NCBI GenBank assembly: GCA_002269645.1
Contig: NIVC01001010.1
Span: 248,001 to 312,000, forward strand
Source: Macrostomum lignano
Taxonomy: Eukaryota
DNA: 64,000 bases
Direction: 5' to 3'
In this document: positions 375 to 27,199 of the stretch, one piece after another
Numbering within the stretch: the stretch's first letter is position 1
How the letters are laid out: every line of letters starts with the position of its first letter
Translations under genes and position numbers: made by a program
The notes under the pieces: generated by a model
What the model saw: the letters and a program-made list of their open reading frames with translations, nothing else
What the model was told of the DNA's origin: nothing
Database searches by the model: none

Positions 375-930
375 TCAGTGCTATGACTGCTTTCAGTTTC
401 CCTGCTATGACTGCTTCAGTTTCCCTGCTATGACTACTTCAGTGTCCCTGCTATGACTGCTTCAGTGTCCCCGCTATGACTGCTTCAGTGTCCCTGCTAT
501 AGCTGCCTTCCCCGCTATTATTGCTTCAGTGTCCCTGCTATGCCTGCTTTCCCCGCTATGACTGCTTTTCTCCGCTATGACTACTTTCAGTTTCCCCTGC
601 TATGACTGCTTTCAGTTTCCCCTGCAAAGACTTCTTTTCTTTGCTATGACTGCTTTCAGTTTCTCCTGGTATGACTGCTTCAGTGTCCCTGCTATGACTG
701 CTTTCTATGACCTGCTTCAGTTTCTCCTGCTATGACTGCTTTTCCCCGCTATGACCTGCTTCAGTTTCCCCTGCTATGACTGCTTTTCCTTCGCTATGAC
801 TGCTTTTCCTTCGCTATGACTGCTTCAGTGTCCCCTGCTATCCCCTGCTATGACTGCTTCAGTGTCCCCTGCTATCCCCTGCTATGACTGCTTTAGTTTC
901 CCCCGCTATGACTGTCTTATGACTGCTTCA
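375..930. repeat. Degenerate ~22-24 bp minisatellite (ctgctatgactgcttcagtgtccc) in the Src-kinase 3' flank
   Basis: Repeated gctatgactgct(t)cagt core. The last unit overlaps the kinase stop codon at 928-930. Confidence 0.9.
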
Positions 931-1707
931 GTGCTCATACTGGGGCTGCTTCTCAACAAAATAGTTCTCAAGCAGGTTCCTCAGCGCGGCAAAGGTGGGC
1001 CTGGCGGCCGGCTCCAGCCGCCAGCAGGCCAGCATGACGCTCTCGTACAGGAACTGGTCGCAGGGCACCCCGCCTGCCGGACAGCTGGGGTTGGCCATCC
1101 GGTATCCGCCACACACCAGCCGCAGGATGTCGCAGTTGCTGTACTCCGGGTAGGGCAGGCCGCCTCTCGTCACGACCTCGTACGCTAAAATTCCAAAGGA
1201 CCAAACGTCGGATTTGTGCGTGAACGCCTTGGATTTGGCCGCCTCCGGGGCGGTCCATCGGATTGGAAACTTGGTGCCCTCCTTGAAGCAGTAGGCCTCC
1301 TCCTCGATGCAGCGGCTCAGGCCGAAGTCGCCAACTTTGACGGTGTTGTTAAGGCCGACTAGAATGTTGGCCGCTCGCAGGTCGCGGTGAATGAAGCGCT
1401 TCTGCTCCAGGTAGCACATGCCGTCAGCCACCTGGAATAGCATGTCAATCATGTGCCCGAAGGTCACTCTGCGGCCTTGCTCGTTGTCTCGTCTCAGGTA
1501 GGCCGTTAGGGCGCCATTCGGCATGAACTCCGTGACGATGTAGAATGGCTCTTCGCGGGTGCACACTCCTACCAGTTGCACAATCTTTGGGTGGTGCAGC
1601 TTGTGCATCTTCTCCGCCTCGCTGAGAAAGTCCGCCTTGTTCATAGTGGCCTCCTTCATGCTCTTCACCGCCACCTCCAATAGGCGGCCCAGTCTGGCTT
1701 TCCACAC
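928..1707 (-). CDS. Src-family non-receptor tyrosine kinase, exon 2 (kinase domain and C-terminal regulatory Tyr)
   Basis: VAVK, HRDLRAAN (Src-type catalytic loop), DFG, FPIRWTAPE, SDVWSFG and C-terminal PQYEH*. Acceptor CAG at 1710-1708 gives phase 0 and joins GQGSFGE|VWKAR, completing the P-loop. Confidence 0.93.
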   Translation of the reverse strand: MWKARLGRLLEVAVKSMKEATMNKADFLSEAEKMHKLHHPKIVQLVGVCTREEPFYIVTEFMPNGALTAYLRRDNEQGRRVTFGHMIDMLFQVADGMCYLEQKRFIHRDLRAANILVGLNNTVKVGDFGLSRCIEEEAYCFKEGTKFPIRWTAPEAAKSKAFTHKSDVWSFGILAYEVVTRGGLPYPEYSNCDILRLVCGGYRMANPSCPAGGVPCDQFLYESVMLACWRLEPAARPTFAALRNLLENYFVEKQPQYEH

Positions 1708-1849
1708 CTGTGCGCATGCGAGGGAGGCAGCGAGCGATGCGAAACTCTTTGGTGATCCTCGGAGATGCTTCCCGCTAAAGAGACAACTTTTTGAGTCCCA
1801 ATTATGCAATAACAGACAGAATAAATACGAAAATTACAGACTGCTTGAT

Positions 1850-4075
1850 CACCAGCCTCCCAGATCCTCAGGTTGGGCAGCCAGAATCCCAGATCCTTAG
1901 ACTGAGCAGCAAGAATCCCAGATACTCAGGCTGAGCAGCCAGAATCCCAAATCCTCAGACTGGGCAGCCAGAATCCCAGATACTCAGGCTGAGCAGCCAG
2001 AATCCCAGATCCTCAGACTGAGCAGCCAGAATCCCAAATCCTCAGGCTGAGCAGCCAGAATCCCAGATCCTCAGGCTGAGCAGCCAGAATCCCAAATCCT
2101 CAGACTGAGCAGCCGGAATCCCAGATACTCAGGCTGAGCAGCCAGAATCCCAGATCATCAGACTGAGCAGCCAGAATCCCAAATCCTCAGACTGAGCAGC
2201 CAGAATCCTAGATACTCAGGCTGAGCAGCCAGAATCCCAAATCCTCAGGCTGAGCCGCCAGAATCCCAGATACTCAGACTGAGCCGCCAGAATCCCAGAT
2301 CCTCATGCTGAGCAGCCAGAATCCCAGATCCTCAGAATGAGCAGCCAGAATCCCAAATCCTCAGGCTGAGCAGCCAGAATCCCAAATCCTCAGACTGGGC
2401 AGCCAGAATCCCAGATACTCAGGCTGAGCAGCCAGAATCCCAGATCCTCAGACTGAGCAGCCAGAATCCCAAATCCTCAGGCTGAGCAGCCAGAATCCCA
2501 GATACTCAGGCTGAGCAGCCAGAATCCCAGATACTCCGACTGAGCAGCCAGAATCCCAGATCATCAGACTGAGCAGCCAGAATCCCAGATCCTCAGGCTG
2601 AGCAGCCAGAATCCCAAATCCTCAGACTGAGCAGCCGGAATCCCAGATACTCAGGCTGAGCAGCCAGAATCCCAGATCATCAGACTGAGCAGCCAGAATC
2701 CCAGATCATCAGACTGAGCAGCCAGAATCCCAAATCCTCAGACTGAGCAGCCAGAATCCTAGATACTCAGGCTGAGCAGCCAGAATCCCAAATCCTCAGG
2801 CTGAGCAGCCAGAATCCCAGATACTCAGGCTGAGCAGCCAGAATCCCAGATACTCCGACTGAGCAGCCAGAATCCCAGATCATCAGACTGAGCAGCCAGA
2901 ATCCCAGATCCTCAGGCTGAGCAGCCAGAATCCCAAATCCTCAGACTGAGCAGCCGGAATCCCAGATACTCAGGCTGAGCAGCCAGAATCCCAGATCATC
3001 AGACTGAGCAGCCAGAATCCCAAATCCTCAGACTGAGCAGCCAGAATCCTAGATACTCAGGCTGAGCAGCCAGAATCCCAAATCCTCAGACTGAGCAGCC
3101 AGAATCCCAGATCCTCAGACTGAGCAGCCAGAATCCCAGATCCTCAGACTGAGCAGCCAGAATCCCAAATCCTCAGGCTGAGCAGCCAGAATCCCAAATC
3201 CTCAGGCTGAGCAGCCAGAATCCCAAATCCTCAGACTGGGCAGCCAGAATCCCAGATCCTCAGGCTGAGCCGCCAGAATCCCAGATCCTCAGACTGAGCA
3301 GCCAGAATCCCAAATCCTCAGGCTGAGCAGCCAGAATCCCAAATCCTCAGACTGAGCAGCCAGAATCCCAAAATCCTCAGACTAAGCAGCCAGAATCCCA
3401 AATCCTCAGACTGAGCAGCCAGAATCCCAGATACTCAGGCTGAGCAGCCAGAATCCCAGATCCTCAGACTGAGCAGCCAGAATCCCAAATCCTCAGGCTG
3501 AGCAGCCAGAATCCCAGATACTCAGGCTGAGCAGCCAGAATCCCAGATACTCCGACTGAGCAGCCAGAATCCCAGATCATCAGACTGAGCAGCCAGAATC
3601 CCAGATCCTCAGGCTGAGCAGCCAGAATCCCAAATCCTCAGACTGAGCAGCCGGAATCCCAGATACTCAGGCTGAGCAGCCAGAATCCCAGATCATCAGA
3701 CTGAGCAGCCAGAATCCCAAATCCTCAGACTGAGCAGCCAGAATCCTAGATACTCAGGCTGAGCAGCCAGAATCCCAAATCCTCAGGCTGAGCCGCCAGA
3801 ATCCTAGATCCTCAGACTGAGCAGCCAGAATCCCAGATCCTCAGACTGAGCAGCCAGAATCCCAAATCCTCAGGCTGAGCAGCCAGAATCCCAAATCCTC
3901 AGGCTGAGCAGCCAGAATCCCAAATCCTCAGACTGGGCAGCCAGAATCCCAGATCCTCAGGCTGAGCCGCCAGAATCCCAGATCCTCAGACTGAGCAGCC
4001 AGAATCCCAAATCCTCAGGCTGAGCAGCCAGAATCTCAAATCCTCAGACTGAGCAGCCAGAATCTCTGATCCCCA
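1850..4075. repeat. 29-bp minisatellite (cagactgagcagccagaatcccagatcct) filling the Src intron
   Basis: Period of 29 read directly (e.g. 3121 to 3150); about 75 copies. Confidence 0.97.
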
Positions 4076-4090
4076 GCTCCAGCCGCTCAC

Positions 4091-4861
4091 CTCGCCGAAC
4101 GATCCCTGACCCAGTTTTTCAACAAAGCTGAGCAGCTGCCTGTTGAGCTCGAAGTCGCGCAGCTGAGGCGGCGGCACGTACTCCCTCGGGCAGGGCAGCC
4201 CCAGCTGGCAGCACATGCCGTCTTGCTGCTGTTGGTAGTGCTCCAGCAGCTCGATCAGGCTCGAAAATCGCCTATTGGGACTGATGTAGAATCCGCCTTC
4301 GTCTGTTGGTCGCACAATGTAGTGCCTCACTAGCACCTTCTGCTGTTGTTGCTGCTGCGCCTCCAAGTCCTCATCTGTCCGCACGCTGAGGCTGAACGCG
4401 CCGGACTCGGAGCGCTGGCCGCACGGCCGCAGGATGAAGCTGCCATGCGGCACGCCCGGCATGAGGAGGCAGCGCTCGGCCTCGCGTCTGTCAACGTCAA
4501 ACCAGGCGGTAAGGGAGGCTGGGCCGCCGTCGTACGGCTGGATGTAGTTGCAGGGCACGTAGCCGCTGTCACCTGTGCGCTGGTTGCGCATCAGCCACCA
4601 GAACTCGCCGCTGGAATTGTCCACCAAGTCTAGGATGTCGTCCTTTTTAAATGATAAATCGTCGTCTGCCTGTTTCTCGAAATCGTACAGGGCTCGCATT
4701 TGAACAGCCGAGGCTGCGGAGGCGGAGGCGGAGGCCGCCTCGGTCGGCGCCGTTGCTGCGGCTACAACGGAGGCGATGGTGGCGCAGCTTTCGCCGTCGA
4801 CAAGCTTCTTCTGCTGAGTGGTGGCGTAGCGACCCCTCCGAGAGAACAGGCAGTTGCCCAT
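4091..4861 (-). CDS. Src-family tyrosine kinase, exon 1 (myristoylation motif, SH3, SH2, start of kinase domain)
   Basis: MGNC N-terminus (Gly2 myristoylation, Cys4 palmitoylation candidate). SH3 ALYDF...WW...GYVPCNY. SH2 WF...REAER...GSFILR...FSLSV...HY. Donor GAG|GTGAG at 4090. The spliced product is about 516 aa. Confidence 0.93.
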
Positions 4862-6164
4862 GCGACTGTCCGGGCGGGCGTTGGCTGTCTGGCAATCTGC
4901 TGCGGTCTCTGCTGCAAGTGTCAGCTTTTAGCCTTGTTTATTTGGCTTTTCACACGCCAAGCTAATGGAATATCCTTTTTCGCTTTTCATTTGTTGCTTT
5001 AGGCGTCTCAAGCAACTCGCCCCTCCCCTTGGCCTCCCGGCGCGCCTCCGGTTGTGCGCGAACACTTGCTGGGTTTGGCTACTTTGCTAAGCTTTTAGCA
5101 TAAGTAAGAGAGTAAGCTAGCATTGCTTAGCCAGACCGCCCGGCTCTAGGGGACCTGCCTCCTGTTGCTGTCAGCACCCGTGGGGTGGGGTCTGCATATG
5201 TTGAGCTAGCTTAGTCAGTGCCATTCGAAATGACATAATTGCACTGTTTAGCACTCGTGCCAGCTCGATACAATATCGATACCATGTACGAATGGTTCCA
5301 GATACGTACAGCTTGAACGATAATACTAAAGTGAAAGCGGTTTTGCCACCGTTTTAATTATGTATAGTTACTGAAGTTTGCGCATTAACAGAGGTTTTAG
5401 ACAGATTGCGGAGATATGTGTGGATATATATTATGTTGAAATGAATGTGTGTCAAAACCGAGTTGCAGACACAGGTGTGTGTGTCAAAACCGAGTTGCAG
5501 ACACCATGACTAGCTGTTCCAGGTATCCAATGGACAGAAAGTTTCTTTAGCGCTTTTGAAGACCAGGAAAGTTTGATGAATAGCCTGTGTATTATATAAT
5601 CTCCAAAATCTTGATGAAGCTGTTTGCCAGTTTTAGTGCAAGCGTCCGCGCAGGCCTAGGTGGATATAGGAGAGATGTTGTTTCCGATTAGCCCTAGTGT
5701 AGACAAGACCAAGCAGTTATTGATTTCTCTAATTAGTCGTTCGCTGAGGCCCGGCAGATTCTTAGTTTGATGGAGTGGTCAAACTTAGCCGCCCAATTTT
5801 TGTCTGGCATATTCGTTTACTAAAATTGAATTGTGAATTTAGCGGTTTCATAGGAGAATCTTAGCTGCTATGAAGATATGATAATCGCCGAGTTCGAATC
5901 CAGTCGCATTACTTTGTGCAATTCAAGCCCTGCACTCGCGGCTTTAGAATAACCGGCACTGCAGTTCACCAGCCAATCTTTCCTACGGCTTATCTAGTGA
6001 TGAATATAACCGCTGTTTTTGGCATAGACACTGCGCTCGTGATTAGATTTATCAACTAGAGCTGCCAACGATTTCTGATAAATAAAGACGGTACATTTTT
6101 TATAAACATGTCTTTAAGCTTGTGGGCACATAAGTAGAGTGTTCTTGTGAACAGATCGTGGTCT

Positions 6165-7245
6165 TGTGAATACATTCGTGGGTATTCTTTTGAACAGATC
6201 TTCAGGTATTCTTGTGAACAGATCTTTAGGTATTTTTGTGAACAGATCTTTAGGTATTCTTGTGAACAGATCTTTAGGTATTCTTGTGAATAGATTCTCA
6301 GGACGTATTTTTGTGAACAGATCATTAGGTAGTCTTGTGAATATATCTTTAGGTATTCTTGTGAATAGATTCTTAGGTATTCTTGTGAATAGATTCTTAG
6401 GTATTCTTGTGAATAGATTATTAGGTATTCTTGTGAAAAGATTATTAGGTATTCTTGTGACTAGATTCTTAGGTATTCTTGTGAATAGATTATTAGGTAT
6501 TCTTGTGAATAGATTCTTAGCTATTCTTTTGAATAGATCTTTAGGTTTTCTTGTAAATAGATTCCTAGGTATTTTTGTGAATAGATCCTTAGGTATTCTT
6601 GGGAATAGATTCTTAGGTATTCTGTGAACAAACTCTTAGGTACTCTTGTGAGATCTTTAGGTATTCTTGTGAACAGATCTTTAGGTATTCTTGTGAACAG
6701 ATCTTTAGGTATTCTTGTGAACAGATCTTTAGGTATTCTTGTGAGATTCTCAGGGCGTATTCTTGTGAACAGATCATTAGGTAGTCTTGTGAATAGATTC
6801 TTAGCTATTCTTTTGAATATATCTTTAGGTATTCTTGTGAATAGATTCTTAGGTATTCTTGTGAATAGATTATTAGGTATTCTTGTGAATAGATTCTTAG
6901 GTATTCTTGTGAATAGATTATTAGGTATTCTTGTGAATAGATTCTTAGGTATTCTTGTGAATAGATTATTAGGTATTCTTGTGACTAGATTCTTAGGTAT
7001 TCTTGTGAATAGATTATTAGGTATTCTTGTGAATAGATTATTAGGTATTCTTGTGAATAGATTATTAGGTATTCTTGTGAATAGATTCTTAGCTATTCTT
7101 TTGAATAGATCGTTAGGTTTTCTTGTAAATAGATTCCTAGGTATTTTTGTGAATAGATCCTTAGGTATTCTTGTGAATAGATTCTTAGGTATTCTGTGAA
7201 CAGATTCTTATGTATTCTTGTGAACAGACTCTTAGGTACTCTTGT
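6165..7245. repeat. 24-bp minisatellite (ggtattcttgtgaatagattctta)
   Basis: 8-aa periodicity (LGILVNRF) in the ORF track; tandem units visible directly. Confidence 0.95.
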
Positions 7246-7633
7246 GTACACAAAGCTAGTGTTGAGTATTCTGTGATAAATGTACTGTAGAATGCATTCC
7301 AAATGAATGCATGTACTTATCAAATATGTTATCATTTACACAAAAGAATGTAATGACAAGTTTAGATTTTAAAGTTTCAATAAAATTGACGCAATTAGCA
7401 TGATATTGAATAAGCGCTGCTCAAAAAACGTTTTTATACAAAACCTAAGAAATTCAACCTAATTTAATCTCTTTATCAAGAGGTTCTTTGGTTCTTTTTA
7501 GTGCAATTATTTGCTGGTGTAAATATCGACTATTGTACAGGCACTGAAAACGTATGTAAACCTGTCCATGCACTCAGGTAAACCCGCAGACAGTGCAAAT
7601 ATACACACTCAGTTCCCAGTTCCATCTCCACTT

Positions 7634-8035
7634 TTAAAACCGGAAATCCTTCTGCAGGCTGCTCTTGATATTCGGTACCATGTAGCAGGTGGAGCCTTTC
7701 CCCGGCACGGGGGTCGAGCCGACCTCGCGACAGACGTGAGTCATCATCTTGAGCAGGTCCATCTTGTCGTAATTCTCCTCGATTACATCGCACAGCTTCT
7801 GAATGTACAAGGAGCCTCTGTATATCGACCTGTAAGACAGGCAATCTTCCCAAGTTGAAAAGCCGAATAAGAAGTCGATGTACTTTGAAATTTTCAACGG
7901 CGCCTTCTTGGCGTTGTCTTCCGGCTCGGGCTTAGACTGAAAGTACTGCATGCCGGTGTCGCCTCGGGTGCGGCAGGCCTGGATGAAGAAGACCTTCGGC
8001 TTACCAACCAGGTCTGGGCAGTGCTCGGCGTCCAC
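7634..8035 (-). CDS. Ankyrin-repeat caspase, exon 3 (catalytic Cys, linker, small subunit)
   Basis: GKPKVFFIQACR, then DFLFGFST, SYRS..RGSLYIQKLC and SSLQKDFRF*, a typical caspase p10. Acceptor AAG at 8038-8036, phase 0. Confidence 0.9.
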   Translation of the reverse strand: MDAEHCPDLVGKPKVFFIQACRTRGDTGMQYFQSKPEPEDNAKKAPLKISKYIDFLFGFSTWEDCLSYRSIYRGSLYIQKLCDVIEENYDKMDLLKMMTHVCREVGSTPVPGKGSTCYMVPNIKSSLQKDFRF

Positions 8036-8084
8036 CTTGGGGGTTTGGGGTGCATTAATCATAAGCAAACTGATTGCAAGATGT

Positions 8085-8390
8085 AGAGTGAGGTGGCTTC
8101 GAGTGATGTGGCTGCGAGTGAGGTGGCTTCGAGTGATGTGGCTGCGGGGTGAGGTGGCTGCGGAGTGAGGTGGCTGCGGAGTGAGGTGGCTGCGGAGTGA
8201 GGTGGCTGCGGAGTGAGGTGGCTGCGGAGTGAGGTGGCTGCGAAGTGAGGTGGCTGCGGAGTGAGGTGGCTGCGGAGTGAGGCGGCGGAGTGAGGTGGCT
8301 GCGGAGTGAAGTGGCTGGGGAGTGAGGTGTCTGCGGAGTGAGGCGGCTGCGGAGTGAGGTGGCTGCAGAGTAAGGTAGCTGCTGAGGGCA
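8085..8390. repeat. 18-bp minisatellite (ggagtgaggtggctgc-type unit) in caspase intron 2
   Basis: Tandem units visible; 6-aa pseudo-periodicity in the ORF track. Confidence 0.9.
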
Positions 8391-8415
8391 AGCACTGACG
8401 GCAAGCGAGTCACAC

Positions 8416-9369
8416 CTGCAGGGCTATGTCGCGGAGCTCAACCAGCTTGCCGTCAGTGCCCTGCACCGCGTCGCCGTGGCCGTGTGCCAGGATGAAGCAC
8501 ACAAAATAGTCAATGTCGGCCAGCACGCCGCTATTAGCAATCTTGCGCATCTCGGCAATCATGCCCTCGCTATCGAGGTCCGGCCTCTCGTGCACCCGAA
8601 AATGCAGGTCAGTCTGGAAGAGCTGGTAGATTCGCTTCACATCCTGCTCGGAGCCGCGTCGAATGTTGTCGAGGTCATTGGATCTGTAAATCTGGTTGAT
8701 AATGAGGCAGTAGCCGTTCTTGGGATTCCGCCTCGGGTACACGTCCAGCGAAGGCCGGTAGGGCTCTAGCAGTTCGGACACCGCCCGGTGGCCTAGCAGG
8801 TGGCTGATCTCGATGGCTGACAGGCCGGAGCTGTTCTTCTGTGCCAGCAGCTTAGCATCGGCGCCGACTGCGGGCAGTAGCAGGCGCGTCAGCTCCTCGT
8901 TGCTGCGCCTCGCTGCGTGCATCAGCGCCGTCTCGCCGTCCCGGTCGGCCAGGTCGAGACGCAGCCGACCGGTGCCCAGCAGGCGTCGCGCCGTGGCCAC
9001 AGCGTCCACGTCGACCGCCATCATCAGCGGCGTCAGGCCGAGCGTCGTCTCCCGACGATTGACATCGACGCCAGAGTCGATGAGGACGGCGCAGCAGCGG
9101 TCGGCGCAGTTCAACGCCGCATAGTGCAGCGGCGCGGCGCCAGTGGCGTCGAGATCGTCAGCCCCGAGCCCTGCGCCCAGCAGGTACTCCACACAGTCGA
9201 TGGAGTCGCGCACGACCGCCCAGTGGAGCAGCGTTTTGCCGTCGGCTGTGCGCTCGGCCAGCTGGTCGAGTTCCGCTTCGCGAAGGTCCTGGATTCGATT
9301 CTGCAGCACCACCAGCGCGAGGTCCATGGCTGAGCAGTCGGACTGCTGCAGTGCAATGGGTTTGGTTCG
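8416..9369 (-). CDS. Ankyrin-repeat caspase, exon 2 (5 ANK repeats plus caspase large subunit)
   Basis: ANK motifs GKTLLHWA, GAAPLHYAA, GLTPLMMA, GETALMHAA, then NGYCLIINQ, RRGSEQD and FVCFILAHG (catalytic His). Donor CAG|GTGTGA at 8415. Phase-0 acceptor at 9371-9370; an alternative start at Met 9327 is possible. Confidence 0.88.
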
Positions 9370-9625
9370 CTGATCAACAAATCAGCTGATTCACAGGTTC
9401 ACGAGCTCACCGATTCACGAATTTTTTATTTAAAAAATTATGGATTTAACAGTTAACAGCTTCACAAATTCACAAATTTACCAATCAACCAATTCACTGA
9501 TTCACTAATACACAAATTCACTACTACACAATTTCACCAATTTACTAATACAGAAATTCACCAATTCACAAATTCACAAATTCACGAATTCACTAACTCA
9601 CTAATTCACCAATACACTAATTCAC

Positions 9626-10267
9626 CAATTCAGCAATCTCCCCAGCAACCTTGTCAGCCGGTAGCGAATGACCCGACCCTGGCATCCTGGGCACCAGCAC
9701 TTCCAGCACCCGCCTGCTGCCGCAGCGCTCGGCCACGTTCACCGCCGTCTCGCCATCGTCATTCAACGCCAGCAGGTTGGCCTTCCAGCTGACCAGAAGG
9801 TTCGCCACCTCCGCATGATCACCGGCAGCGGCCAGGTGCAGCGCCGCGTTCCCGACGCTGTCCCGCAGCTCCAGGCTGACGGCTCCAAATGGATCCTGGC
9901 GCAGCAGCAGCTCCACGATACTAGAATGGCCGAGCTCGGCCGCCAGCATCAGCGGCGTCTTGGCGGAGGCGTCCAGGGCCATCCGGTTGGCGCCGCACCT
10001 AATCAGCAGTTCGGCGACGGCCTCAGAGTTGTGCCTTGCGGCCACGTGCAGCGGCGTGGTGCCCTGTGGACTAACCGCGTCAATGCCCAGTCCGTTGTCT
10101 AGCAGGAGCTTAGCCGCATCGAAGCTGTCATTCATCGCCGCGGAGTGCAGCGGTCCAGCCGAGCCGTTGTAGTTGTTGCAGTCTGATGGGTCCTTCATTA
10201 AGTCCTTCAGCTCCGGCGAATTGTTTAACAGAGCGTGCCGCTTCATCACTTTGATGCGTTTCTCCAT
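9626..10267 (-). CDS. Ankyrin-repeat exon (5 ANK repeats), probable exon 1 of the ANK-caspase gene
   Basis: GPLHSAA, GTTPLHVAA, KTPLMLAA, GNAALHLAA, GETAVNVA. First ATG is at 10267 (the track start 10321 is TTG; upstream in-frame TGA at 10361). Donor TTG|GTGAAT at 9625 is in phase with the next exon; unspliced, the ORF stops at 9617. Confidence 0.78.
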
Positions 10268-11520: not shown

Positions 11521-13464
11521 TTCGGGTTTTAGCAAAAAATCAAATAATAGTTACTAGGGATCGTGGCCGGGGTGAAGCAGGTGCAATGATAGATTTTGTG
11601 CGTACTTTTCGTTTCTACTACGCTATTGTCCGGCTGCCAATATAAAAGTCCATAGCTTTTCCCGTCGTTTTTCTGCGTTCCAAAGATATTCTTAAGAATA
11701 TCTTCCTACTAGAAGCAGAAGTCTAAAAAAAAGCAAAACGTGTCGTTCTAGCGTTTCTCCCGGGAATTGGGCGCAAGATCTGCTTGTAGGCGCGCAGATT
11801 AATGAAAAAAATGTTCAATCTAAAACATGATTCGCCACTGTGGTTTGCTTATTCGTCGTAAGACAAGTAAGAAATCCTATAGCCTTACTTGGTAGAGAGC
11901 TGATCATGCCTCCAACTCAGCAGCTGGGGGGGTAGAGTGGCTGTTGGGTAAAGCAAACCACCCAGCACCAGGGATATTAACAGAGATTGTTCGCGAGCTG
12001 TGAGTATTATATGGGCACAGGAAATGGCCAAACCTGAGAAGGCATTTGGCCGGCAGCAGGCCCGCCACTTAAGAGGAAAAATCATATTAGACAATGTAAG
12101 CGACGGCCGCCTGGGGGGCTGTAAGTGCTACTGCACTGGAAGCGGCGTGCCAGATTTCCCACTTGAGCCATTAATTGCCTGTGCAATGCTGCTTGCTCTC
12201 TTCCTGCTGGCTGGGGGGGGGATTAGCGACGGGGATATTGATGAATTTCGATCAGCTGGAACTGGAGCTGGCCACAGGAAGGAATTAACGAATTATATAG
12301 CAGAACGCAGTTGCCAAGGCTCCATTCTATCGATTGCTAAAGGCGGGCGGGCAACTTCAAAGGGAAGTTGCTGGAAAGAAACTATAGAATAGGAGGCGGA
12401 AGGAGAGATCGAGCCGGTTTGACGTGGATTCCTCTATGTCTTGATCCACGCACGTCAGAACGGCCACTCGTAGCAATCTTCTAATTAGTTGTGTATGCGT
12501 GGCACAGTCACAGTTGTTTGGCGAAAATTGGTGCTGATTTGTTATGAAAGCTTAAAGCTATTATTAAACGCCACGTAATGAGCAGCAACAGGCACTCTAA
12601 TGTTGATAATAAATATGCCCGATCACTGTAACTATGCTGTAATACTGTAATACTGTAACTATGCTACGCATGCACAACTACAACTAATTAAGGAGTTACT
12701 GTACTATACATGGCCGTTCTGTAGTTTTGACGTGCACTCAGATAGAGAGGCACTAGAGGGGAGATGCGAGTGGGGAGACAAGAGAAGGAAAGACTATAGG
12801 TAGAGAGGGGATCAGAGCACTGCAGCCATGAACGCGTCCGACTCTCGCGCCTCGGCCCCTGGTTCGATTCCGTGCGCGGCACGAAAATTAAGCAGGTGGG
12901 TTGTTGTGCGATTCACAGCCATGAGGGCTAACCCCCCCCCGCCCCAAGGCACAGAGCTAGAGTGTACATTCCTGACGATTAGACAGTCAGGGCGCTGTAC
13001 ACCCTGCGTGAGCGCGTGTGTGAGTGCTGTGCCTGCGTACATAGCATTGGCGCGCTTGCATGACGCCAAGGTGCCCAGAAGAGAAATTTCTTCAGATTCA
13101 AAATAAAGATCTACGTCAGAAATTCAAAACTCCTTTGCACACCTCTACCCCCAGTGGACTTTACCTGCTCTTGAAGAAGAAACCTGTGTCTTACAAAGAA
13201 AAGTGAAAGATGTTAATCGTTAGCGTCAATTCATTGCAATCCCTTGCAATTAGTGTAACGGCAGCTGAACTACACTTGGACTGGTCCTAGCTGCCTTCCT
13301 CTGTGCCAAAAGCAGAAGGAACAACATGCTCTTAGGTCGTAATTAGCCTGTGAGCACCGCGGCATACAGGGGGCAATGCAACACTCCAGCTGTGCCCAAT
13401 TAAGCATTTAAAGATCAAGGATATACGAGCGTAGGTCCTGAATCGGCCTAAACTCGTATTTGTC

Positions 13465-14315
13465 TCTGTATATTTGTACAAACTGATTTCATGTCTTAGT
13501 GTCATCTGTATATTTGTACAAACTGATTTCATGTCTCAGTGTCATCTGTATATTTGTACAAACTGATTTCATGTCTCAGTGTCATCTGTATATTTGTACA
13601 AACTGATTTCATGTCTCAGTGTCTTTGTATATTTGTACAAACTGATTTCATGTCTCAGTGTCATCTGTATATTTGTACAAACTGATTTCATGTCTCAGTG
13701 TCTTTGTATATTTGTACAAACTGATTTCATGTCTCAGTGTCTGCATATTGAACAAACTGATTTCATGTCTCAGTGTCATCTGTATATTGAACAAACTGAT
13801 TTCATGTCTCAGTGTCATCTGTATATTTGTACAAACTGATTTCATGTCTCAGTGTCGCTGTATATTGAACAAACTGATTTCATGTCTCAGTGTCTGCATA
13901 TTGAACAAACTGATTTCATGTCTCAGTGTCATCTGTATATTGAACAAACTGATTTCATGTCTCAGTGTCATCTGTATATTGAACAAACTGATTTCATGTC
14001 TCAGTGTCATCTGTATATTGAACAAACTTATTTCATGTCTCAGTGTCATCTGTATATTGAACAAACTGATTTCATGTCTCAGTGTCTGCATATTGTACAA
14101 ACTGATTTCATGTCTCAGTGTCATCTGTATATTGTACAAACTGATTTCATGTCTCAGTGTCATCTGTATATTAAACAAACTGATTTCATGTCTCAGTGTC
14201 ATCTGTATATTGTACAAACTGATTTCATGTCTCAGTGTCATCTGTATATTGTACAAACTGATTTCATGTCTCAGTGTCATCTGTATATTGAACAAACTGA
14301 TTTCATGTCTCAGAC
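13465..14315. repeat. ~37-40 bp minisatellite (tgtatattgaacaaactgatttcatgtctcagtgtcatc)
   Basis: 13-aa periodicity in the ORF track; about 22 units. Confidence 0.95.
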
Positions 14316-14614
14316 TCACGCCCACAGACAAGCCTACACTAATCTGAGTCTGGCTCACGCCACAGCCTAATGGCATTACCATGCAGCCAAGGTATAGCCG
14401 CATCCGGTATCCCATCATCATCCCGCTCTAACGGGCAGAAAAGGCAATAAGGTCATTAGCGTGTTATAAGCAGACAGAATATAAGCAGTAGGCCTTGGTT
14501 TGCATGGTAAGTCGGATTTTAAGCCCTTATTTATTTTTTCCGCTTCTCAAAAATATACAAAAAAAAGCGCGCAAGTAGTTCACCAAGTTAGATTTTTGCA
14601 TAGGTGCACCAACG

Positions 14615-15365
14615 ACTGTGTGCGCTTCTTACTGTGCGCGCTTCTTACTGTGGGCGCTTCTTACAGTGCGCGCTTATTACTACAGTGCGCGCTTCTTACA
14701 GTGCGCGCTTCTTACAGTGCGCGCTTCTTACAGTGCGCGCTTCTTACAGTGCGCGCTTCTTACAGTGCGCGCTTCTTACAGTGCGCGCTTATTACTACAG
14801 TGCGCGCTTCTTACAGTGCGCGCTTCTTACAGTGCGCGCTTCTTACAGTGCGCGCTTCTTACAGTGCGCGCTTCTTACTGTGTGCGCTTCTTACAGTGCG
14901 CGCTTCTTACAGTGCGCGCTTCTTACAGTGCGCGCTTCTTACAGTGCGCGCTTCTTACAGTGCGCGCTTCTTACAGTGCGCGCTTCTTACAGTGTGCGCT
15001 TCTTACAGTGCGCGCTTCTTACAGTGCGCGCTTCTTACAGTGCGCGCTTCTTACAGTGCGCGCTTCTTACAGTGCGCGCTTCTTACAGTGCGCGCTTCTT
15101 ACAGTGCGCGCTTCTTACAGTGCGCGCTTATTACAGTGCGCGCTTCTTACAGTGTGCGCTTCTTACAGTGCGCGCTTCTTACAGTGCGCGCTTCTTACTG
15201 TGTGCGCTTCTTACAGTGCGCGCTTCTTACAGTGCGCGCTTCTTACAGTGCGCGCTTCTTACAGTGCGCGCTTCTTACAGTGTGCGCTTCTTACAGTGCG
15301 CGCTTCTTACAGTGCGCGCTTCTTACAGTGTGCGCTTCTTACAGTGCGCGCTTATTACGTTACGC
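14615..15365. repeat. 16-bp CpG-rich minisatellite (ttcttacagtgcgcgc)
   Basis: Tandem units visible directly. Confidence 0.95.
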
Positions 15366-16727
15366 GCTTTCAACTGTGCGTTATTTTAGCTGCGCACTTC
15401 TGCTTATTCAAGCGTTCAGTTCAGCCAATGTTTTTGCATAACCGAATCTCCATCGAGTCAGCTTGATGTTGAAGTTAATCTTGTTTATAAATTCAATTGG
15501 CCCGTGCAGAAAACTTTTTCCTTGCACCAGAGGTCAGATAAATTCGATCAAAAGTGCCTGGTTGCCTTCAGCGTTTAATAAATTATTTATTCTATATTGG
15601 GCAACATTTTGGGGGCAGTAAGTGCAATCAAATGAATTGGAGCCCTCTGAGCTCAGCTTGATCAACTTGGTGGACTCGACGGACTGCAAACCAAGGACTA
15701 CTAATGTTAGCTGGACCGGAAACTATGATTCTTGGAAAATGTTCAAGAAGGCAGGTTTTTGCCGAAAAAATACATTGCGGAGAATGGAGGTTTTCATATT
15801 TCAGTACAAAATTTGTTATTGCATTTAATATTAGGCAGACCCAATGCTCATCTTTTGCTCATCTTGTTTTATAGTTAAAAATCAATTTTCTTTCGAAATC
15901 AATAAGCTAAGCATGATAAAAAATATTCATAAAATGCACTACTTACGACTTGAGAAAGGCAAGTCATATCGGAAAGAAAAGCATTGGGTCTGCCTCCTAT
16001 CAAAAGCACAAATTTTGTGCTGACAATTAATAAACTTTTTTTCTGTAAAACCAGCCTCCTAAACATTTCTATGAAACGCAGTTTCCCCGTCCTTCTACTT
16101 GAGTAGGCCCTCGCTACAAGCTGCAAATGCCAAAAATTCATCTGGAAAATCCCTAATCAGAAAATCCCTCTCATTGCAAAAACCTTATTCTCCCATCAGA
16201 GCAATACTCATTATAAGAATCCCCCGCTTATTCTGGTCGATACATACTCATATAATGTTTATTCCATTGCGAAAACGGCAACTAAGGAATTTCTTCAACC
16301 CCAAAAAAGATCAAAAAAGCTGAATTTAGGCCGATGGAGGCCGCCGTCCCGGTAACAGTAATTTAGGAATTTCAGGGGCTCAAACCAGCGACAGCTCTCG
16401 ATGCTGCCTCCCCATTCCCATACAGGATGCAGCCTTAGGGGGTTATTTTGTTGCAATTTCGTCCCATAGCGAGGTGGTTCTGTCCAACGCCACTTCTGCA
16501 CGAGAACGCCCCCCCCCCCTGACCCACCGGAACTGAGCAAGCCAGTAGGGGAAGCCGACAGGGTGCTCAGGATAAGCAAGCGATGGGGAGAATATTTATG
16601 GGAGAAAAATTTGGCGTGGCGCTCTGTGAGCGACAGGGGAGTCCGCATGAGACGGACAGTGGCGCTGGGTTGGGATTAAAAATAATTGGAAAGCCCAAGA
16701 AAGTACAGCGCGACCACACGTGTGACC

Positions 16728-17086
16728 TGTCAAGTCGCGCCCAGTAAACAATGACAAGGCCGCCCGTGGGCTTGGTTTGAGTCAAGTACGAAGTTGTGTA
16801 TTTGAGATGAGCGAATTATTGCAATGATTGTGAGATACGAGGTGGTAGGTGGCGAGACCAATATATAGGCTTAAAAGACAAACAAGTAAGTGGGCTTAAA
16901 ACTCAGAATCGATCACTACTGAATATTATCATGTCAAGGGGGAGAGAGAGAAAAAGTACGCAGAGCAGCGTACACCGGAGTTGGCCGGTTTGGTTAGTTA
17001 GGCTGGCTGGCTAGTTAGAGTTACTCATAATTGGACTCAGGTGAGTCAGGTGCAGTGCAGTACATCAAAACACGCCCGGCACCTCA
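16728..17086 (-). repeat. 3' LTR (359 bp)
   Basis: Direct repeat of 21004-21362; only 2 mismatches found by eye. Confidence 0.95.
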
Positions 17087-20000
17087 TCTCCCCCTTCGAA
17101 TCGCAACGGGGGCACGCCTCGATTCGCTCGGAGGTTGTAGCTCGGTCTCTGAGCCGTAGTCGCCTTGTCAGTTCCGGCTCTGCTCTCCGCTAAGCGGTTG
17201 TGGCCACCGGACTCGGGAGTACTCGGGACTGAGCTCGCCGCCGGCTGGTTCTCCACCTGCTCTGACGTGGCCGAGACCGGAGGTCCGTCGCTGCCGGGCG
17301 TCACTGTTGGCAGGTCGGCGGGCTTCGCCGCCCCCTCGGAGCGGAGGTTGCCGTTCAGGTCGGTTGTCGCAGTCGCGCCGCCCTCATTGTTGTCAGGCTC
17401 GTGTCGCCGAAGTTGGTCAAGGTGGGCGAGTGTGACTCTGTTGCCTTGTCGCACGATCAGCGCCGTGTTGGATCCCTTCTGCGCTAGGAATTCTGCCTTC
17501 TCCGGGATCGCGCCTCTCCTTGGGGCGTACCACACCTCGGACCGGATTGCTGTTCTCATGGTGATGGGGTTCCGCAGCTGCCTGCCCATCAGCTGCGCTG
17601 GACTGAACTCTCTTCCGGCATGCGGCACGCATCGGTAGTTTAGCAGAATCCGCGCGAGGAACGCGTCGTACGACTCCTGCTGGTCCCAGCCCGCCGAGGC
17701 CACCTTGATCGTCTGCACCATGCGCTCAGCCAGGCCGTTCGACTGGGGGTGGTATGGCGGAGTTTTCACAGCGCGGCAGCCAATTCTGCTCAGCCAACTC
17801 ACCAACCCTTCATCATGAAATTCAGCAGCATTGTCACTCACCAGGGTTCGTGGAACTCCATTGCGGGCGAAGACCTCTTGGAGGACCTTCCTGACGGTCG
17901 CGGCGCTCTTGTCCGGCACTCGGACGGCCTCCGGCCAGGCGGACATGGCGTCGACCAGGACCAGCAGGAGCCCGACCTTTGGGACGTGAGCGTGGTCCAT
18001 GTGGACGCGTCCCCAGGGTTCAGAGTCGGCCGGCCATTGATGGACGCTGCTGTGGCCGCTTTGGCGTTGCTTGGCGCAGGTGTGGCAGGCACGGACGAAT
18101 CCTTCCACGTCGCCGCAGTAGCCTGGCCACCAGACGGAGTTGCGGACCAGCGCTCGTGTGCTCGAGGCACCGGGGTGCGCCCCGCTGTGTACCAACTCCA
18201 GGACGCGGCTTCGCAAAGACGAGGGAATGACTGGCCGGTCTCCGTAGCACACTACCGAGTCGTCTATTGTAAGCGCGTGACGAATTGCCTTGAAGGGCCG
18301 CTCTGCAGGGGAGCAGCCCGACCAGCGATTTCCGGCTATCCTGCGCATGACATCTGCTAGCAGCCTGTCACGTTTTGTCTCCTCTGCTAGCTCATTCCAA
18401 CCAATGACGCTTTCACCAGCCCAATGCACCAGGTGGTGGTGGTGAGTCGCAGCTTCAACCTGGTCGTCCGGAACGTCGGCAAAGTCGAGCCGGGAGAGCG
18501 CATCGGCGTGCGGAATTTGGGCTCCTCGGACGTACTCAATTGCGAAGTCGAACCCCATGAGGCGGATGGCCCAGCGAAGCAGTCGAGCGTTGGCGACCTT
18601 GGGGAGTTGTTGTCTTGTTCCAAACAGGAACTCTAGAGGGCGGTGGTCCGTTCGCAGTGTGAAACGCTTGCCTAGAAGGAATTGTCGAGCCCTCTCCATC
18701 GCCCAAACAATCGCCAGAGCCTCCCGCTCGATGTTGGAGTAGCGTGCCTCCGCCTGTGTCAATCGCCGGCTGAAGTAGATGACGGGGTGCCCTTCCTGCG
18801 TGAGCACGGCGGCCACCGCCTTTTCACTGGCGTCTGTCGTCAGCGTTGTCTCTTTGGCTCGGTCATAAGGCTGGATGATCGGGCCGGAGCTCAGAAGCTT
18901 CTTCAGCTGGTGGAAGGCCGCTTCTTGCGCAGCTCCCCATACAAACTCCGCTCCCTTCTTGCGCAGCTGGTTCAAAGGCTCGACAACGTGCGCATAGCTG
19001 TTGACAAACCTTCCGAAGAAATTGCAGAGACCAAGGAACGACTCTAACTGGCGACGGTCGCGTGGCGCGGAGATCTCCATGATTTTGCTGACCAGGCCGG
19101 GGTCTGGCGAGATTCCGTCTGCGCTGATTCTGTAGCCCAGGAACTTGACTGTCTTGGCCCCCAGGTTGGATTTGGCGAGATTTATATTCATGCCGGCCGC
19201 CTGTAGGGTCTTGATTACTTCATCAACTTTGGCCTTGAGACCCTCGGCAGATTGACCTCCGATAAGGATGTCGTCTTGATAAATGACCTTGCCGCTTACG
19301 TCCTCGAGGGTGGTCTCCATTGCCTTTTGAAAGATGGCGGATGCTGACTTAAGCCCAGGCACTAGTCGGGTGTAGCGGAACAGCCCTAAAGGAGTTGCAA
19401 TCGTGGTGACCTCCCTGCTCTTCTCCTCGAGCTCGATCTGTAAGTAGGCGTCAGATAGGTCGAGAGTGGCAAAGTCAGTCATTCCGGCAACGTCCGAGAA
19501 GATCGTCTCGACGGTTGGCATGGGGTAGGTGTCCCCGCACACCTGATGGTTGACCCCCGCTTTGTAGTCGGCGCAAATTCTGACATTGCCATTAGGTTTT
19601 AGGACGCAGACGATCGGGGACGCCCATTCGCTGCCGCCCTCCGTCACCGGCTCGATGATGCCCTCAGTCACGAGACGCTTTAGCTCCTGATTGACGCGGT
19701 CACGCAGGTGCAGCGGCACTGCTCTGGCTGCGCAGTAGAAAGGCTTGGCACCCTCAATCAGCTTGATCCTGGCCTGGAAGCCTTTCAGACAATCGAGATG
19801 TTGAACTACGGAATCCTGAGCACTGGCTGCCTGGCCTTCGGGGTTCCAATCCAGATTGTCAAGACCCAGCAGTCCATGTGACTTGCGCGCTGCTGTGACC
19901 ACCAAGTCGACTGTGCGGAACTTTTCTTGGTCATCCCACGTGGCAGTGAACTCTCCCAGGGTTCTTATGATCGATCCGTCGAACTGTCTCAGAATTCGTC

Positions 20001-21003: not shown

Positions 21004-21362
21004 TGTCAAGTCGCGCCCAGTAAACGATGACAAGGCCGCCCGTGGGCTTGGTTTGAGTCAAGTACGAAGTTGTGTATTTGAGATGAGCGAATTATTGCAA
21101 TGATTGTGAGATACGAGGTGGTAGGTGGCGAGACCAATATATAGGCTTAAAAGACAAACAAGTAAGTGGGCTTAAAACTCAGAATCGATCACTACTGAAT
21201 ATTATCATGTCAAGGGGGAGAGAGAGAAAAAGTACGCAGAGCAGCGTACACCGGAGTAGGCCGGTTTGGTTAGTTAGGCTGGCTGGCTAGTTAGAGTTAC
21301 TCATAATTGGACTCAGGTGAGTCAGGTGCAGTGCAGTACATCAAAACACGCCCGGCACCTCA
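21004..21362 (-). repeat. 5' LTR (359 bp)
   Basis: Direct repeat of 16728-17086; contains TATATA and two TGACTCA motifs. Confidence 0.95.
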
Positions 21363-22774: not shown

Positions 22775-22778
22775 GTAG

Positions 22779-23232: not shown

Positions 23233-23435
23233 CCCTGATAATCTCAGCATCAGATCCTCTGATTCTTCCAATGGCTCCCAATCCCCCTCTCGATCCCCTT
23301 GCAATTTGATCGGCCTTGCGAGCTGCAGCTGAGGCCAGAATGGCTGCTTATCTATCGGCTCAGTCCGTATCTCCACGCCTAGATCTTCTCGAAAAATTTA
23401 ACGGATTGGCCACCCAAACCTTTTTTGCTCACCAG

Positions 23436-27110: not shown

Positions 27111-27199
27111 CTTATTTATTCTTTTTCCCTTCAACTGAGTGCCGGGGTTAAGTGGAGCCCGTTGAGCTTTTTGAAGTATTTATTGGAATCACGCATTTA

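What the first reader, a model, noticed from the sequence alone, without database searches (positions are those of the whole stretch)
7634..10267. Caspase with an ankyrin-repeat prodomain (about 10 ANK repeats plus an intact caspase)
Seen in sequence: three minus-strand exons splice in phase 0 into a ~665-aa protein of ANK repeats followed by a complete caspase large and small subunit. At least 5 ANK repeats share one uninterrupted exon with the caspase large subunit, so the fusion does not depend on my splice model. Established knowledge: classical animal initiator caspases use CARD or DED prodomains recruited by Apaf-1, FADD or inflammasome adaptors. Inference: an ANK prodomain implies a different activation route, such as direct sensing of a protein ligand or pathogen effector, or autoinhibition. 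That would be a non-canonical cell-death or immunity module. I cannot check whether the architecture has already been reported in invertebrates.
Basis: partly seen in the sequence, partly recalled or inferred. Interest (0 to 1): 0.85.

Follow-up and report, generated by a model that had tools for sequence, protein, structure and literature searches.

The report
Flatworm caspase with ankyrin-repeat prodomain
This is a real, transcribed gene of the free-living flatworm Macrostomum lignano that joins ten ankyrin repeats to an intact caspase-8-like protease; such "ANK caspases" were already described in flatworms but were reported as limited to parasitic species, so this is a new variant, not a new kind.

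Summary
Window 7634-10267 (minus strand) encodes a three-exon gene for 2x5 ankyrin repeats fused directly to a complete caspase domain (Pfam Ank_2 1e-61, Peptidase_C14 7.5e-44). One uninterrupted ORF carries both ANK repeats and the p20 start, so the fusion does not depend on any splice model.

The window is 100% identical to Macrostomum lignano contig NIVC01001010.1. There the gene is annotated from RNA-seq transcripts as a 648-aa hypothetical protein (PAA73468.1/PAA76500.1).

The architecture is not new. "ANK caspases" of flatworms were noted in Schistosoma in 2014 and described in 2024, but as restricted to parasites and undetected in M. lignano. That claim does not hold: the authors' own M. 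lignano sequence PAA88208 is an ANK caspase and groups with the parasite clade.

The window gene is a second type. It has ten repeats, no long linker and a QACRT active site. It sits in a Macrostomum-only clade with a kinase-prodomain caspase, and its catalytic domain is caspase-8-like.

The most likely function is an apical caspase recruited through its ANK modules. This is untested. Verdict: new variant of a known kind, moderate interest.

The parts
9650..10267 (-). Exon 1: start codon (10267-10265), N-terminal cap helix and ANK repeats 1-5 (aa 1-206)
   Evidence: Translation and splice context AAG|gt. Pfam Ank_2 2.4e-49 on this exon alone. Identical to the N-terminus of the public M. lignano proteins.
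9346..9649 (-). Intron 1 (phase 0), largely an 8/24-bp tandem repeat, with a NAGNAG acceptor (exon 2 starts at 9345 or 9342)
   Evidence: Tandem repeat at 9461-9637. The 649-aa (PAA58750.1, A0A1I8GZW9-type) and 648-aa (PAA73468.1) models differ by one Gln at this junction.
8416..9345 (-). Exon 2: ~45-aa low-confidence linker, ANK repeats 6-10, junction, and the first ~100 residues of the caspase large subunit, including catalytic His494 (codon 8484-8482)
   Evidence: The uninterrupted ORF has Ank_2 1.7e-22 plus Peptidase_C14 positions 2-101. His aligns with the caspase-8 SHG His and is invariant in alignment A3.
8036..8415 (-). Intron 2 (phase 0), a 16-bp minisatellite x19. A stop codon follows the donor immediately in the exon-2 frame, while the frame of exon 3 is open through most of the intron
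   Evidence: Tandem repeat at 8086-8386. CAG|gtg tga at the donor. ORF 7634-8413 runs through most of the intron in the exon-3 frame.
7634..8035 (-). Exon 3: rest of the large subunit with catalytic Cys537 (QACRT, codon 7975-7973), a short intersubunit linker, the small subunit, and the stop codon (7636-7634)
   Evidence: Pfam Peptidase_C14 positions 108-232, 1.7e-24. AlphaFold pLDDT is about 90 or higher over most of aa 440-540 and 570-649, and Foldseek gives TM 0.83-0.89 to caspase-8/-3/-7.
9680..10162 (-). ANK block 1 (repeats 1-5, aa ~36-196)
   Evidence: Pfam stretches. Helix-pair pattern in the model. 34% identical to block 2.
8770..9246 (-). ANK block 2 (repeats 6-10, aa ~240-398), abutting the caspase domain with no spacer
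   Evidence: The last repeat and the junction align colinearly with M. lignano paralogue P0122.

Best explanation
The gene encodes an expressed, catalytically competent, Asp-specific caspase. Its catalytic domain is caspase-8-like, and its prodomain is two five-repeat ankyrin modules instead of death effector domains. I propose that it acts as an apical (initiator-type) caspase. In this model the ANK modules are the recruitment surface: binding of an unidentified partner (adaptor, receptor tail or ligand) brings zymogens together. The caspase domains then dimerise and auto-process at Asp residues. Candidate sites are PSLD just before the p20 and EPED in the 32-aa intersubunit linker. The active enzyme then cleaves the caspase-3/7-like executioners that M. 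lignano also has. It would thus fill part of the role of the DED-caspase/FADD arm, which was not detected in this species. Shown here: the gene structure, the transcript-based annotation, the domain composition, the conserved catalytic and P1-pocket residues, the caspase fold, the caspase-8 affinity, and conservation between genomic copies. Inferred: everything about partners, dimerisation, processing sites and downstream targets.
For: Domains: Ank_2 1e-61 and Peptidase_C14 7.5e-44, with the fusion inside one ORF. Transcript support: the window is 100% identical to NIVC01001010.1. That assembly's GenBank gene models derive only from RNA-seq and transcriptome assemblies (PMC5730564). Catalytic machinery: His494, Cys537, Arg435 and Gln535 are invariant and Arg585 nearly invariant in a 24-caspase alignment. 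The motif table shows R-x-G, AHG, QAC and SYR aligned with those of all other caspases. Fold: pLDDT is about 90 or higher over most of the caspase domain, and the top Foldseek hits are caspase-8 structures with TM 0.83-0.89. Caspase-8 affinity: the best PDB sequence hits are caspase-8 at 8.8e-28. A DED-caspase-8 group HMM scores 184.5 bits, against 149 for executioners, 135 for CARD caspases and 133 for the neodermatan-type ANK clade. A profile of the flatworm clades retrieves mostly vertebrate DED caspase-8 after the flatworm members. Constraint: two genomic copies differ at 9/1950 exon positions (6 synonymous, 3 non-synonymous, dN/dS 0.16) against 38/684 intron positions. Context: the published survey found no DED caspase and no FADD in M. 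lignano (supplementary table 1 of 10.1101/2023.12.11.571055). That study also proposes an initiator role for ANK caspases. Precedent that ANK repeats bind caspases: the zebrafish adaptor Caiap binds active caspase-1 homologue Caspa through its ANK domain (PMC5662874).
Against: There is no functional, localisation or interaction data for this or any other ANK caspase. ANK repeats are not known to self-assemble the way DED or CARD domains do, so induced proximity needs a multivalent partner that has not been identified. The active-site pentapeptide is QACRT; the normally near-invariant final Gly is Thr, unique among the 41 caspases compared, and its effect on activity is unknown. The proposed processing sites are read off the sequence only. 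The ANK part of the structure model is only moderately confident (pLDDT 55-86, pTM 0.43). No inter-domain geometry could be assessed.
Confidence: 0.5

Rival explanations
1. Sensor or autoinhibition model. The ANK modules fold back on the catalytic domain, or act as bait. They hold the caspase inactive until a ligand, a pathogen effector or a protease displaces or removes them. This would make the protein a one-chain sensor-effector of innate immunity.
For: ANK repeats can bind caspases directly (Caiap-Caspa; designed ANK proteins binding caspases are cited in PMC11463336). The second ANK block abuts the caspase domain with no spacer. In abalone, a caspase is combined with a STAND NTPase and 28 ANK repeats in an NLR-like order, with ANK in the usual sensor position (P0176). 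The flexible, Asp-rich 45-aa linker between the two ANK blocks has pLDDT about 36-42.
Against: No evidence of intramolecular contact was obtainable. There is no NTPase or other switch domain in this protein. There are no signs of diversifying selection: the copies are nearly identical and dN/dS is 0.16. The ANK region resembles only generic ANK proteins.
Confidence: 0.2
2. Substrate-targeting model. The enzyme is an ordinary effector-like caspase, and the ANK modules recruit particular substrates or anchor it at a cellular site. It is not the top of a cascade.
For: ANK domains commonly recruit substrates to catalytic domains (general statement in PMC5662874). The intersubunit linker is short (32 aa). 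Raw similarity to M. lignano caspases annotated as caspase-3-like (the P0121-P0123 family, 37%) is as high as to caspase-8.
Against: P0121-P0123 are themselves truncated models of ANK-linked paralogues and group with the window gene, not with executioner caspases. True executioner caspases form a separate group that excludes this gene. The DED-caspase-8 HMM fits the window domain best.
Confidence: 0.15
3. Catalytically impaired regulator, like c-FLIP. It dimerises with other caspases but does not itself cut.
For: QACRT instead of QACXG, unique in the comparison set. The Trp of the GSW motif that lines the S4 pocket in caspase-3 (my own knowledge) is replaced by Leu.
Against: The His-Cys dyad and all three P1-Asp ligands are intact. 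The same Trp loss is shared by every ANK-type flatworm caspase in the comparison, and by two vertebrate DED caspases. The copies are under purifying selection.
Confidence: 0.08
4. Annotation or assembly artefact: two neighbouring genes (an ANK gene and a caspase gene) wrongly merged.
For: M. lignano makes polycistronic precursor transcripts. One UniProt model of this very locus (A0A1I8H965, 1588 aa) is a junk read-through into the downstream kinase gene.
Against: ANK repeats 6-10 and the p20 start share one stop-free ORF. The same structure and synteny recur on a second contig, NIVC01002336.1, and the identical 648-aa protein is recorded on two contigs. A paralogue family shows the same ANK-caspase junction.
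Confidence: 0.02

Closest known systems
Platyhelminth 'ANK caspases' (Casp.Ank of Krasovec et al. 2024, PMC11463336; e.g. Echinococcus granulosus KAH9278879.1, Schistosoma haematobium CAH8442799.1; first noted in Schistosoma by Lee et al. 2014)
   Same: N-terminal ankyrin repeats plus a C-terminal p20/p10 caspase domain of caspase-8-like affinity. Found in a flatworm where no DED caspase or FADD was detected. Shares loss of the Trp in the GSW motif (G-S/T-x-Y-I/V-Q).
   Different: Ten repeats in two blocks against about 4-5. No 150-250-aa low-complexity spacer between the ANK region and the caspase. QACRT instead of QACRG. The ANK region is not specifically similar (30.7 bits to M. lignano PAA88208, 12 bits to the cestode ANK caspases, below most generic ANK hits). 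The caspase domain never falls inside that clade (0 of 600 bootstrap trees), and a sister relationship gets only 8-23%. The true M. lignano member of that clade is PAA88208, not this gene (53-91% support).
M. lignano kinase-prodomain caspase PAA54824.1 ('Casp.PK' of the same paper) and the P0121-P0123 family (UniProt A0A1I8GRA2, A0A1I8HPJ2, annotated caspase-3 / caspase-3-like)
   Same: Nearest catalytic domains (35-37% identity). Together they form a Macrostomum-only clade with 64-74% NJ bootstrap, and window+PK are sisters at 53-75%. P0122 keeps the last ANK repeat and the same ANK-caspase junction.
   Different: PAA54824 carries two protein-kinase-like domains and a long Gln-rich spacer instead of ANK repeats. 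The P0121-P0123 models are N-terminally truncated, so their full prodomain is unknown.
Caspase-8 (DED initiator caspase)
   Same: Best sequence and structure match of the catalytic domain (8.8e-28; TM 0.83-0.86). Shares KPKVFFIQAC and SYR motifs, and has a long prodomain.
   Different: No death effector domains; no FADD was detected in this species (per the cited survey); about 30% identity only.
Haliotis rufescens XP_048241358.1 (P0176): caspase - nSTAND3 NTPase - 28 ANK repeats
   Same: Caspase and ANK repeats in one lophotrochozoan protein.
   Different: Opposite order with a central STAND NTPase (NLR-like). The caspase domain is only 29% identical and is not closely related in the tree.
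Caiap (CARD + 16 ANK inflammasome adaptor of fish, PMC5662874)
   Same: An ANK domain that physically engages a caspase in a cell-death or immunity pathway.
   Different: The ANK domain and the caspase are on separate polypeptides. It is a vertebrate protein and no homology is implied.

Membership tests
Caspases (MEROPS C14A / Pfam Peptidase_C14) | Peptidase_C14 domain covering both p20 and p10 | tested here: met
   7.5e-44, profile positions 2-232 of 233.
Caspases (MEROPS C14A / Pfam Peptidase_C14) | Catalytic His-Cys dyad and the Arg/Gln/Arg P1-Asp pocket | tested here: met
   His494, Cys537, Arg435 and Gln535 are invariant and Arg585 nearly invariant in alignment A3, and are aligned in the motif table. 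They also align with the caspase-8 residues.
Caspases (MEROPS C14A / Pfam Peptidase_C14) | QACXG pentapeptide | tested here: not met
   QACRT. The final Gly is Thr in this copy and in all public copies. This is a variant motif, not loss of the nucleophile.
Caspases (MEROPS C14A / Pfam Peptidase_C14) | Caspase alpha/beta fold | tested here: met
   pLDDT about 90 or higher over most of the caspase domain. Foldseek E 2.7e-17, TM 0.83-0.89 to caspase-8/-3/-7.
Caspases (MEROPS C14A / Pfam Peptidase_C14) | Cleavage after Asp | not testable with these tools
   Needs an enzyme assay.
Platyhelminth ANK caspases (Casp.Ank sensu Krasovec et al. 2024) | Ankyrin-repeat prodomain N-terminal to p20/p10 | tested here: met
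Platyhelminth ANK caspases (Casp.Ank sensu Krasovec et al. 2024) | Membership of the monophyletic Casp.Ank clade | tested here: not met
   The window gene is inside the clade in 0 of 600 NJ bootstrap trees. Clade A+B monophyly gets 8-23%. M. lignano PAA88208 joins the clade at 53-91%. These are distance methods only, and the backbone is unresolved, so a sister relationship is not excluded.
Platyhelminth ANK caspases (Casp.Ank sensu Krasovec et al. 2024) | About 4-5 ANK repeats followed by a long low-complexity spacer before the caspase domain (my reading of the members' sequences) | tested here: not met
   E. granulosus, S. haematobium and PAA88208 show this layout. The window protein has 10 repeats and no spacer.
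Platyhelminth ANK caspases (Casp.Ank sensu Krasovec et al. 2024) | Restricted to parasitic flatworms (as published) | tested here: not met
   M. lignano is free-living. Both this gene and PAA88208 (Ank_2 5.6e-25 + Peptidase_C14 9.2e-55) contradict the restriction itself.
Initiator (apical) caspases | Long prodomain with a protein-interaction module | tested here: met
   About 400 aa of ANK repeats.
Initiator (apical) caspases | Death-fold prodomain (CARD or DED) | tested here: not met
   No Pfam hit other than the ANK families and Peptidase_C14 at E<=0.01.
Initiator (apical) caspases | Monomeric zymogen activated by induced dimerisation, upstream of executioners | not testable with these tools
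   Needs biochemistry and genetics.
Ankyrin-repeat proteins | Tandem 33-residue helix-turn-helix repeats | tested here: met
   Ank_2 1e-61 with 6 stretches, Ank 1.4e-38 with 5 stretches. Ten helix pairs in the model.

The most novel reading that the evidence does not exclude
The window gene is not a diverged copy of the parasite-type ANK caspase. It is an independent fusion within a Macrostomum-specific radiation of caspase-8-like enzymes whose prodomains were swapped repeatedly (2x5 ANK here, an ANK-linked P0121-P0123 family, tandem kinase domains in PAA54824). On this reading, flatworms in which the FADD/DED arm was not detected rewired the death protease several times to new receptor-like modules. 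M. lignano would then carry two unrelated ANK-caspase types side by side.
Probability: 0.3. Interest if true: 0.6.

Novelty: new variant of a known kind. Interest (0 to 1): 0.42.

Why it matters
Three points matter.

1. It corrects a published evolutionary inference. ANK caspases were interpreted as an acquisition linked to parasitism and reported as not detected in M. lignano. Their presence in an early-branching free-living flatworm points to an origin before the parasitic flatworms (Neodermata) arose. Two types are present: the orthologue PAA88208 and this distinct ten-repeat form. This also removes the link to parasitism.

2. The function of ANK caspases is completely untested. M. lignano has published transgenesis and a compact laboratory life cycle, and I recall that RNAi works in it. 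The question [quoted passage not shown] could therefore be addressed in a free-living model rather than in schistosomes or tapeworms.

3. The Macrostomum clade pairs closely related catalytic domains with different prodomains (ANK or kinase). This is a natural experiment in how death proteases are rewired.

For the scan itself, this is a good catch of a real non-canonical architecture, but not an unknown one.

Tried and rejected
- Full-length protein searches were swamped by generic ANK proteins. Of the 120 hits listed, only the M. lignano cluster carried a caspase domain. In the exhaustive HMMER scan of 1.84 billion representatives, the top 150 were giant ANK proteins, apart from the query's own cluster and one abalone caspase-STAND-ANK protein.
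- The caspase-domain-only search gave 47 hits, none with ANK repeats. Parasite ANK caspases were missed, probably by the word pre-filter.
- The last search, with a profile of both flatworm clades, returned flatworm fragments and then mainly vertebrate caspase-8. It revealed no further free-living flatworm ANK caspase.
- I suspected that the published 'kinase-prodomain caspase' of M. lignano was a read-through of this locus into the downstream Src-like kinase gene. This is rejected: PAA54824 is a different protein with its own N-terminal kinase-like domains. A junk read-through model of this locus does exist in UniProt (P0320).
- An exact look-up of P0001 found no contig. The NCBI isoforms did.
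- A search for expression data on Mlig001045 found nothing, either in full texts or in the supplements of PMC5816591.
- A search for the annelid (Alitta virens) ANK caspase sequence in the held supplement found nothing.
- An MSA that included ANK-only proteins misaligned them onto the caspase domain and was discarded. As a result the ANK part of the structure model has only moderate confidence.
- No maximum-likelihood or Bayesian tree could be run, because no such software was available. The relation between the two flatworm clades therefore stays unresolved.
- Rfam found nothing in the window.
Full report
**1. The observation**

Pfam finds Ank_2 (1e-61, six stretches), Ank (1.4e-38) and one Peptidase_C14 domain covering profile positions 2-232 of 233 (7.5e-44).

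The single stop-free ORF 8413-9327 contains both Ank_2 (1.7e-22) and the first 100 positions of Peptidase_C14 (3.2e-14). The third exon continues the same profile at positions 108-232. The fusion therefore does not rest on a splice model.

**2. What the locus is**

Its 90% cluster holds five M. lignano entries, including GenBank PAA73468.1/PAA76500.1 (648 aa, BOX15_Mlig001045g4/g1) and PAA58750.1 (649 aa, g3).

Looking up the 648-aa protein returned contig NIVC01001010.1 of assembly GCA_002269645.1. Its sequence is 100% identical to window 1-20267, and the annotated gene span equals 7634-10267. The window is thus this contig of the free-living flatworm M. lignano.

The GenBank annotation of this assembly was made only from RNA-seq and transcriptome assemblies (StringTie/TACO, with ORFs by TransDecoder; Wudarski et al. 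2017, PMC5730564). An assembled transcript therefore spans all three exons.

The donor is AAG|gt at 9650/9649 and the acceptor is cag| at 9346/9345. The 648-aa form uses the next AG, at 9343/9342, so this is a NAGNAG acceptor. The corrected protein is 649 or 648 aa.

**3. Anatomy**

- Exon 1 encodes a cap helix and ANK repeats 1-5.
- Exon 2 encodes a ~45-aa low-confidence linker, ANK repeats 6-10 and, with no spacer, the start of the large subunit including His494.
- Exon 3 encodes Cys537, a 32-aa intersubunit linker and the small subunit.

The two ANK blocks are 34% identical to each other. Intron 1 lies exactly between them, which suggests an internal duplication of a five-repeat module. Both introns consist mostly of tandem repeats.

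In a 24-caspase alignment, His494, Gly495, Gln535, Cys537 and Arg435 are invariant and Arg585 is nearly invariant. They align with the corresponding caspase-8 residues. The only oddity at the active site is QACRT in place of QACXG, unique among the 41 caspases compared.

AlphaFold2 models the caspase domain with pLDDT about 90 or higher over most of it. The ANK part reaches 55-86, because no ANK homologues were in the alignment. Foldseek's top matches are caspase-8, -3 and -7 (TM 0.83-0.89).

**4. Copies and constraint**

Two contigs carry the identical 648-aa product. A third (NIVC01002336.1) carries the 649-aa form with the same neighbours: ANK caspase, then an SH3-SH2-tyrosine kinase of 516 aa, then an Arf-like GTPase. 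This fits the known large-scale duplication in this line.

Between the two compared copies, exons differ at 9 of 1950 positions (6 synonymous, 3 non-synonymous; dN/dS 0.16). Introns differ at 38 of 684 aligned positions. The numbers are small, but they are consistent with a functional gene. No second caspase or ANK gene lies in the window.

**5. What is already known**

Krasovec et al. [quoted passage not shown] The paper credits its first identification in Schistosoma to Lee et al. 2014 (which I could not read). It proposes that these are initiators with an unidentified activator.

The paper states that ANK caspases are restricted to parasitic flatworms and that free-living flatworms lack them. 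Its species table records ANK caspase, DED caspase and FADD as not detected in M. lignano. For M. lignano it lists only a CARD caspase and a "protein kinase domain" caspase, PAA54824.1, placed as sister to the ANK caspases. No other paper in the held library deals with this architecture.

**6. Relation to the known ANK caspases**

The preprint's supplement holds the sequences.

First, the authors' own M. lignano list contains PAA88208. It has Ank_2 (5.6e-25), a Gln-rich spacer and Peptidase_C14 (9.2e-55), the same layout as the Echinococcus and Schistosoma proteins. In neighbour-joining trees of the caspase domain it joins the parasite ANK caspases with 53-91% bootstrap support across six settings. 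The published restriction to parasites therefore fails on that sequence alone.

Second, the window gene is a different thing.
- It never falls inside that clade (0 of 600 replicates).
- It groups with PAA54824 (53-75%) and with the UniProt "caspase-3-like" family P0121-P0123 in a Macrostomum-only clade (64-74%).
- The two clades come together in only 8-23% of replicates.
- Its ANK region scores 30.7 bits against PAA88208 and 12 bits against the two cestode ANK caspases (Echinococcus, Hymenolepis), below most generic ANK hits.

P0122 aligns colinearly with the window protein from the last ANK repeat through the junction into the caspase domain. The P0121-P0123 models are therefore probably truncated ANK-linked paralogues.

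One shared character hints at common ancestry. All eleven members of the two flatworm clades replace the Trp of the GSW motif (G-S/T-x-Y), whereas all other flatworm caspases in the set keep it. Two vertebrate DED caspases do the same, however.

The catalytic domain is caspase-8-like by three measures: PDB sequence hits, group HMM scores (184.5 bits against 133-149) and the profile search.

I could run only distance trees. Whether there was a single ancient ANK fusion or two independent ones is left open.

**7. Mechanism**

My best reading is an apical caspase whose ANK modules replace DEDs as the recruitment surface. Activation would be by partner-induced proximity, followed by auto-processing and cleavage of the species' caspase-3/7-like enzymes.

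What is shown is the gene, its transcript-based annotation, the domains, the intact catalytic and P1 residues, the fold, the caspase-8 affinity and the constraint between copies. Everything downstream of that is inference.

Rivals are:
- an autoinhibited one-chain sensor;
- substrate targeting by the ANK modules;
- a c-FLIP-like impaired regulator (because of QACRT);
- an annotation artefact, which is effectively excluded.

A precedent that ANK domains engage caspases exists in fish Caiap. An abalone protein combines a caspase, a STAND NTPase and 28 ANK repeats in NLR-like order.

**8. Verdict**

What is new is modest but concrete. A free-living flatworm has ANK caspases, contrary to the literature. 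This gene is a structurally distinct second type (2x5 repeats, direct fusion, QACRT) in a lineage-specific clade that also contains a kinase-prodomain caspase. I rate it a new variant of a known kind, with interest about 0.4.

Noticed in passing
Not in the window: GenBank PAA88208.1 (M. lignano), sequence taken from supplement 1, part 40, of bioRxiv 10.1101/2023.12.11.571055: A 599-aa M. lignano caspase in the published data set has Ank_2 (5.6e-25), a Gln-rich spacer and Peptidase_C14 (9.2e-55). It groups with the parasite ANK caspases. The paper nevertheless records ANK caspases as not detected in this species and as restricted to parasites.
   Followed up: yes
Not in the window: UniProt A0A1I8GRA2 / A0A1I8HPJ2 family (P0121-P0123): These M. 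lignano proteins are annotated 'caspase-3(-like)'. They appear to be N-terminally truncated models of another ANK-linked caspase. P0122 keeps an ANK-like segment and the same ANK-caspase junction as the window gene. The full gene was not recovered.
   Followed up: partly
Not in the window: Haliotis rufescens XP_048241358.1 (P0176): An 1878-aa abalone protein with an N-terminal caspase domain, a central nSTAND3 NTPase and 28 C-terminal ANK repeats. This is an NLR-like layout with a caspase as the built-in effector.
   Followed up: partly
window 928-4861 (-), and UniProt A0A1I8H965 (P0320): Directly downstream on the same strand lies a Src-like SH3-SH2-tyrosine-kinase gene (516 aa in GenBank). 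Between its SH3-SH2 ORF and its kinase ORF lies a 2.2-kb array of a 29-bp repeat (1858-4076), presumably intronic. One UniProt model (1588 aa) reads from the caspase through to the kinase gene's start and then into nonsense frames. This suggests a read-through or polycistronic precursor transcript.
   Followed up: partly
window 9342-9346: A tandem NAGNAG acceptor at intron 1. Public isoforms differ by one Gln (649 against 648 aa).
   Followed up: yes
window 8036-8415: Intron 2 is a 16-bp x19 minisatellite. Most of it (up to 8413) is stop-free in the frame of exon 3, giving a misleading 259-aa ORF (7634-8413) that runs from inside the intron to the gene's stop codon.
   Followed up: yes
window 17065-21033 (-): An uninterrupted 1322-aa ORF of a Ty3/gypsy-type LTR retrotransposon polyprotein (aspartyl protease, reverse transcriptase, RNase H, integrase).
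   Followed up: no
window 22253-24020 (+): A rhodopsin-family GPCR split over two ORFs (7tm_1 positions 1-142 and 138-260). They are separated by a 13-bp x35 tandem repeat (22779-23229), probably another intron made of a minisatellite.
   Followed up: no
whole window, e.g. 6162-7246, 13461-15369, 27199-28915, 29365-31794, 45173-46487, 53558-55617, 62618-64000: More than twenty minisatellite arrays (units of 12-57 bp, up to 2.4 kb long) fill the intergenic and intronic DNA. They generate long spurious ORFs on both strands, with no credible Pfam match.
   Followed up: no
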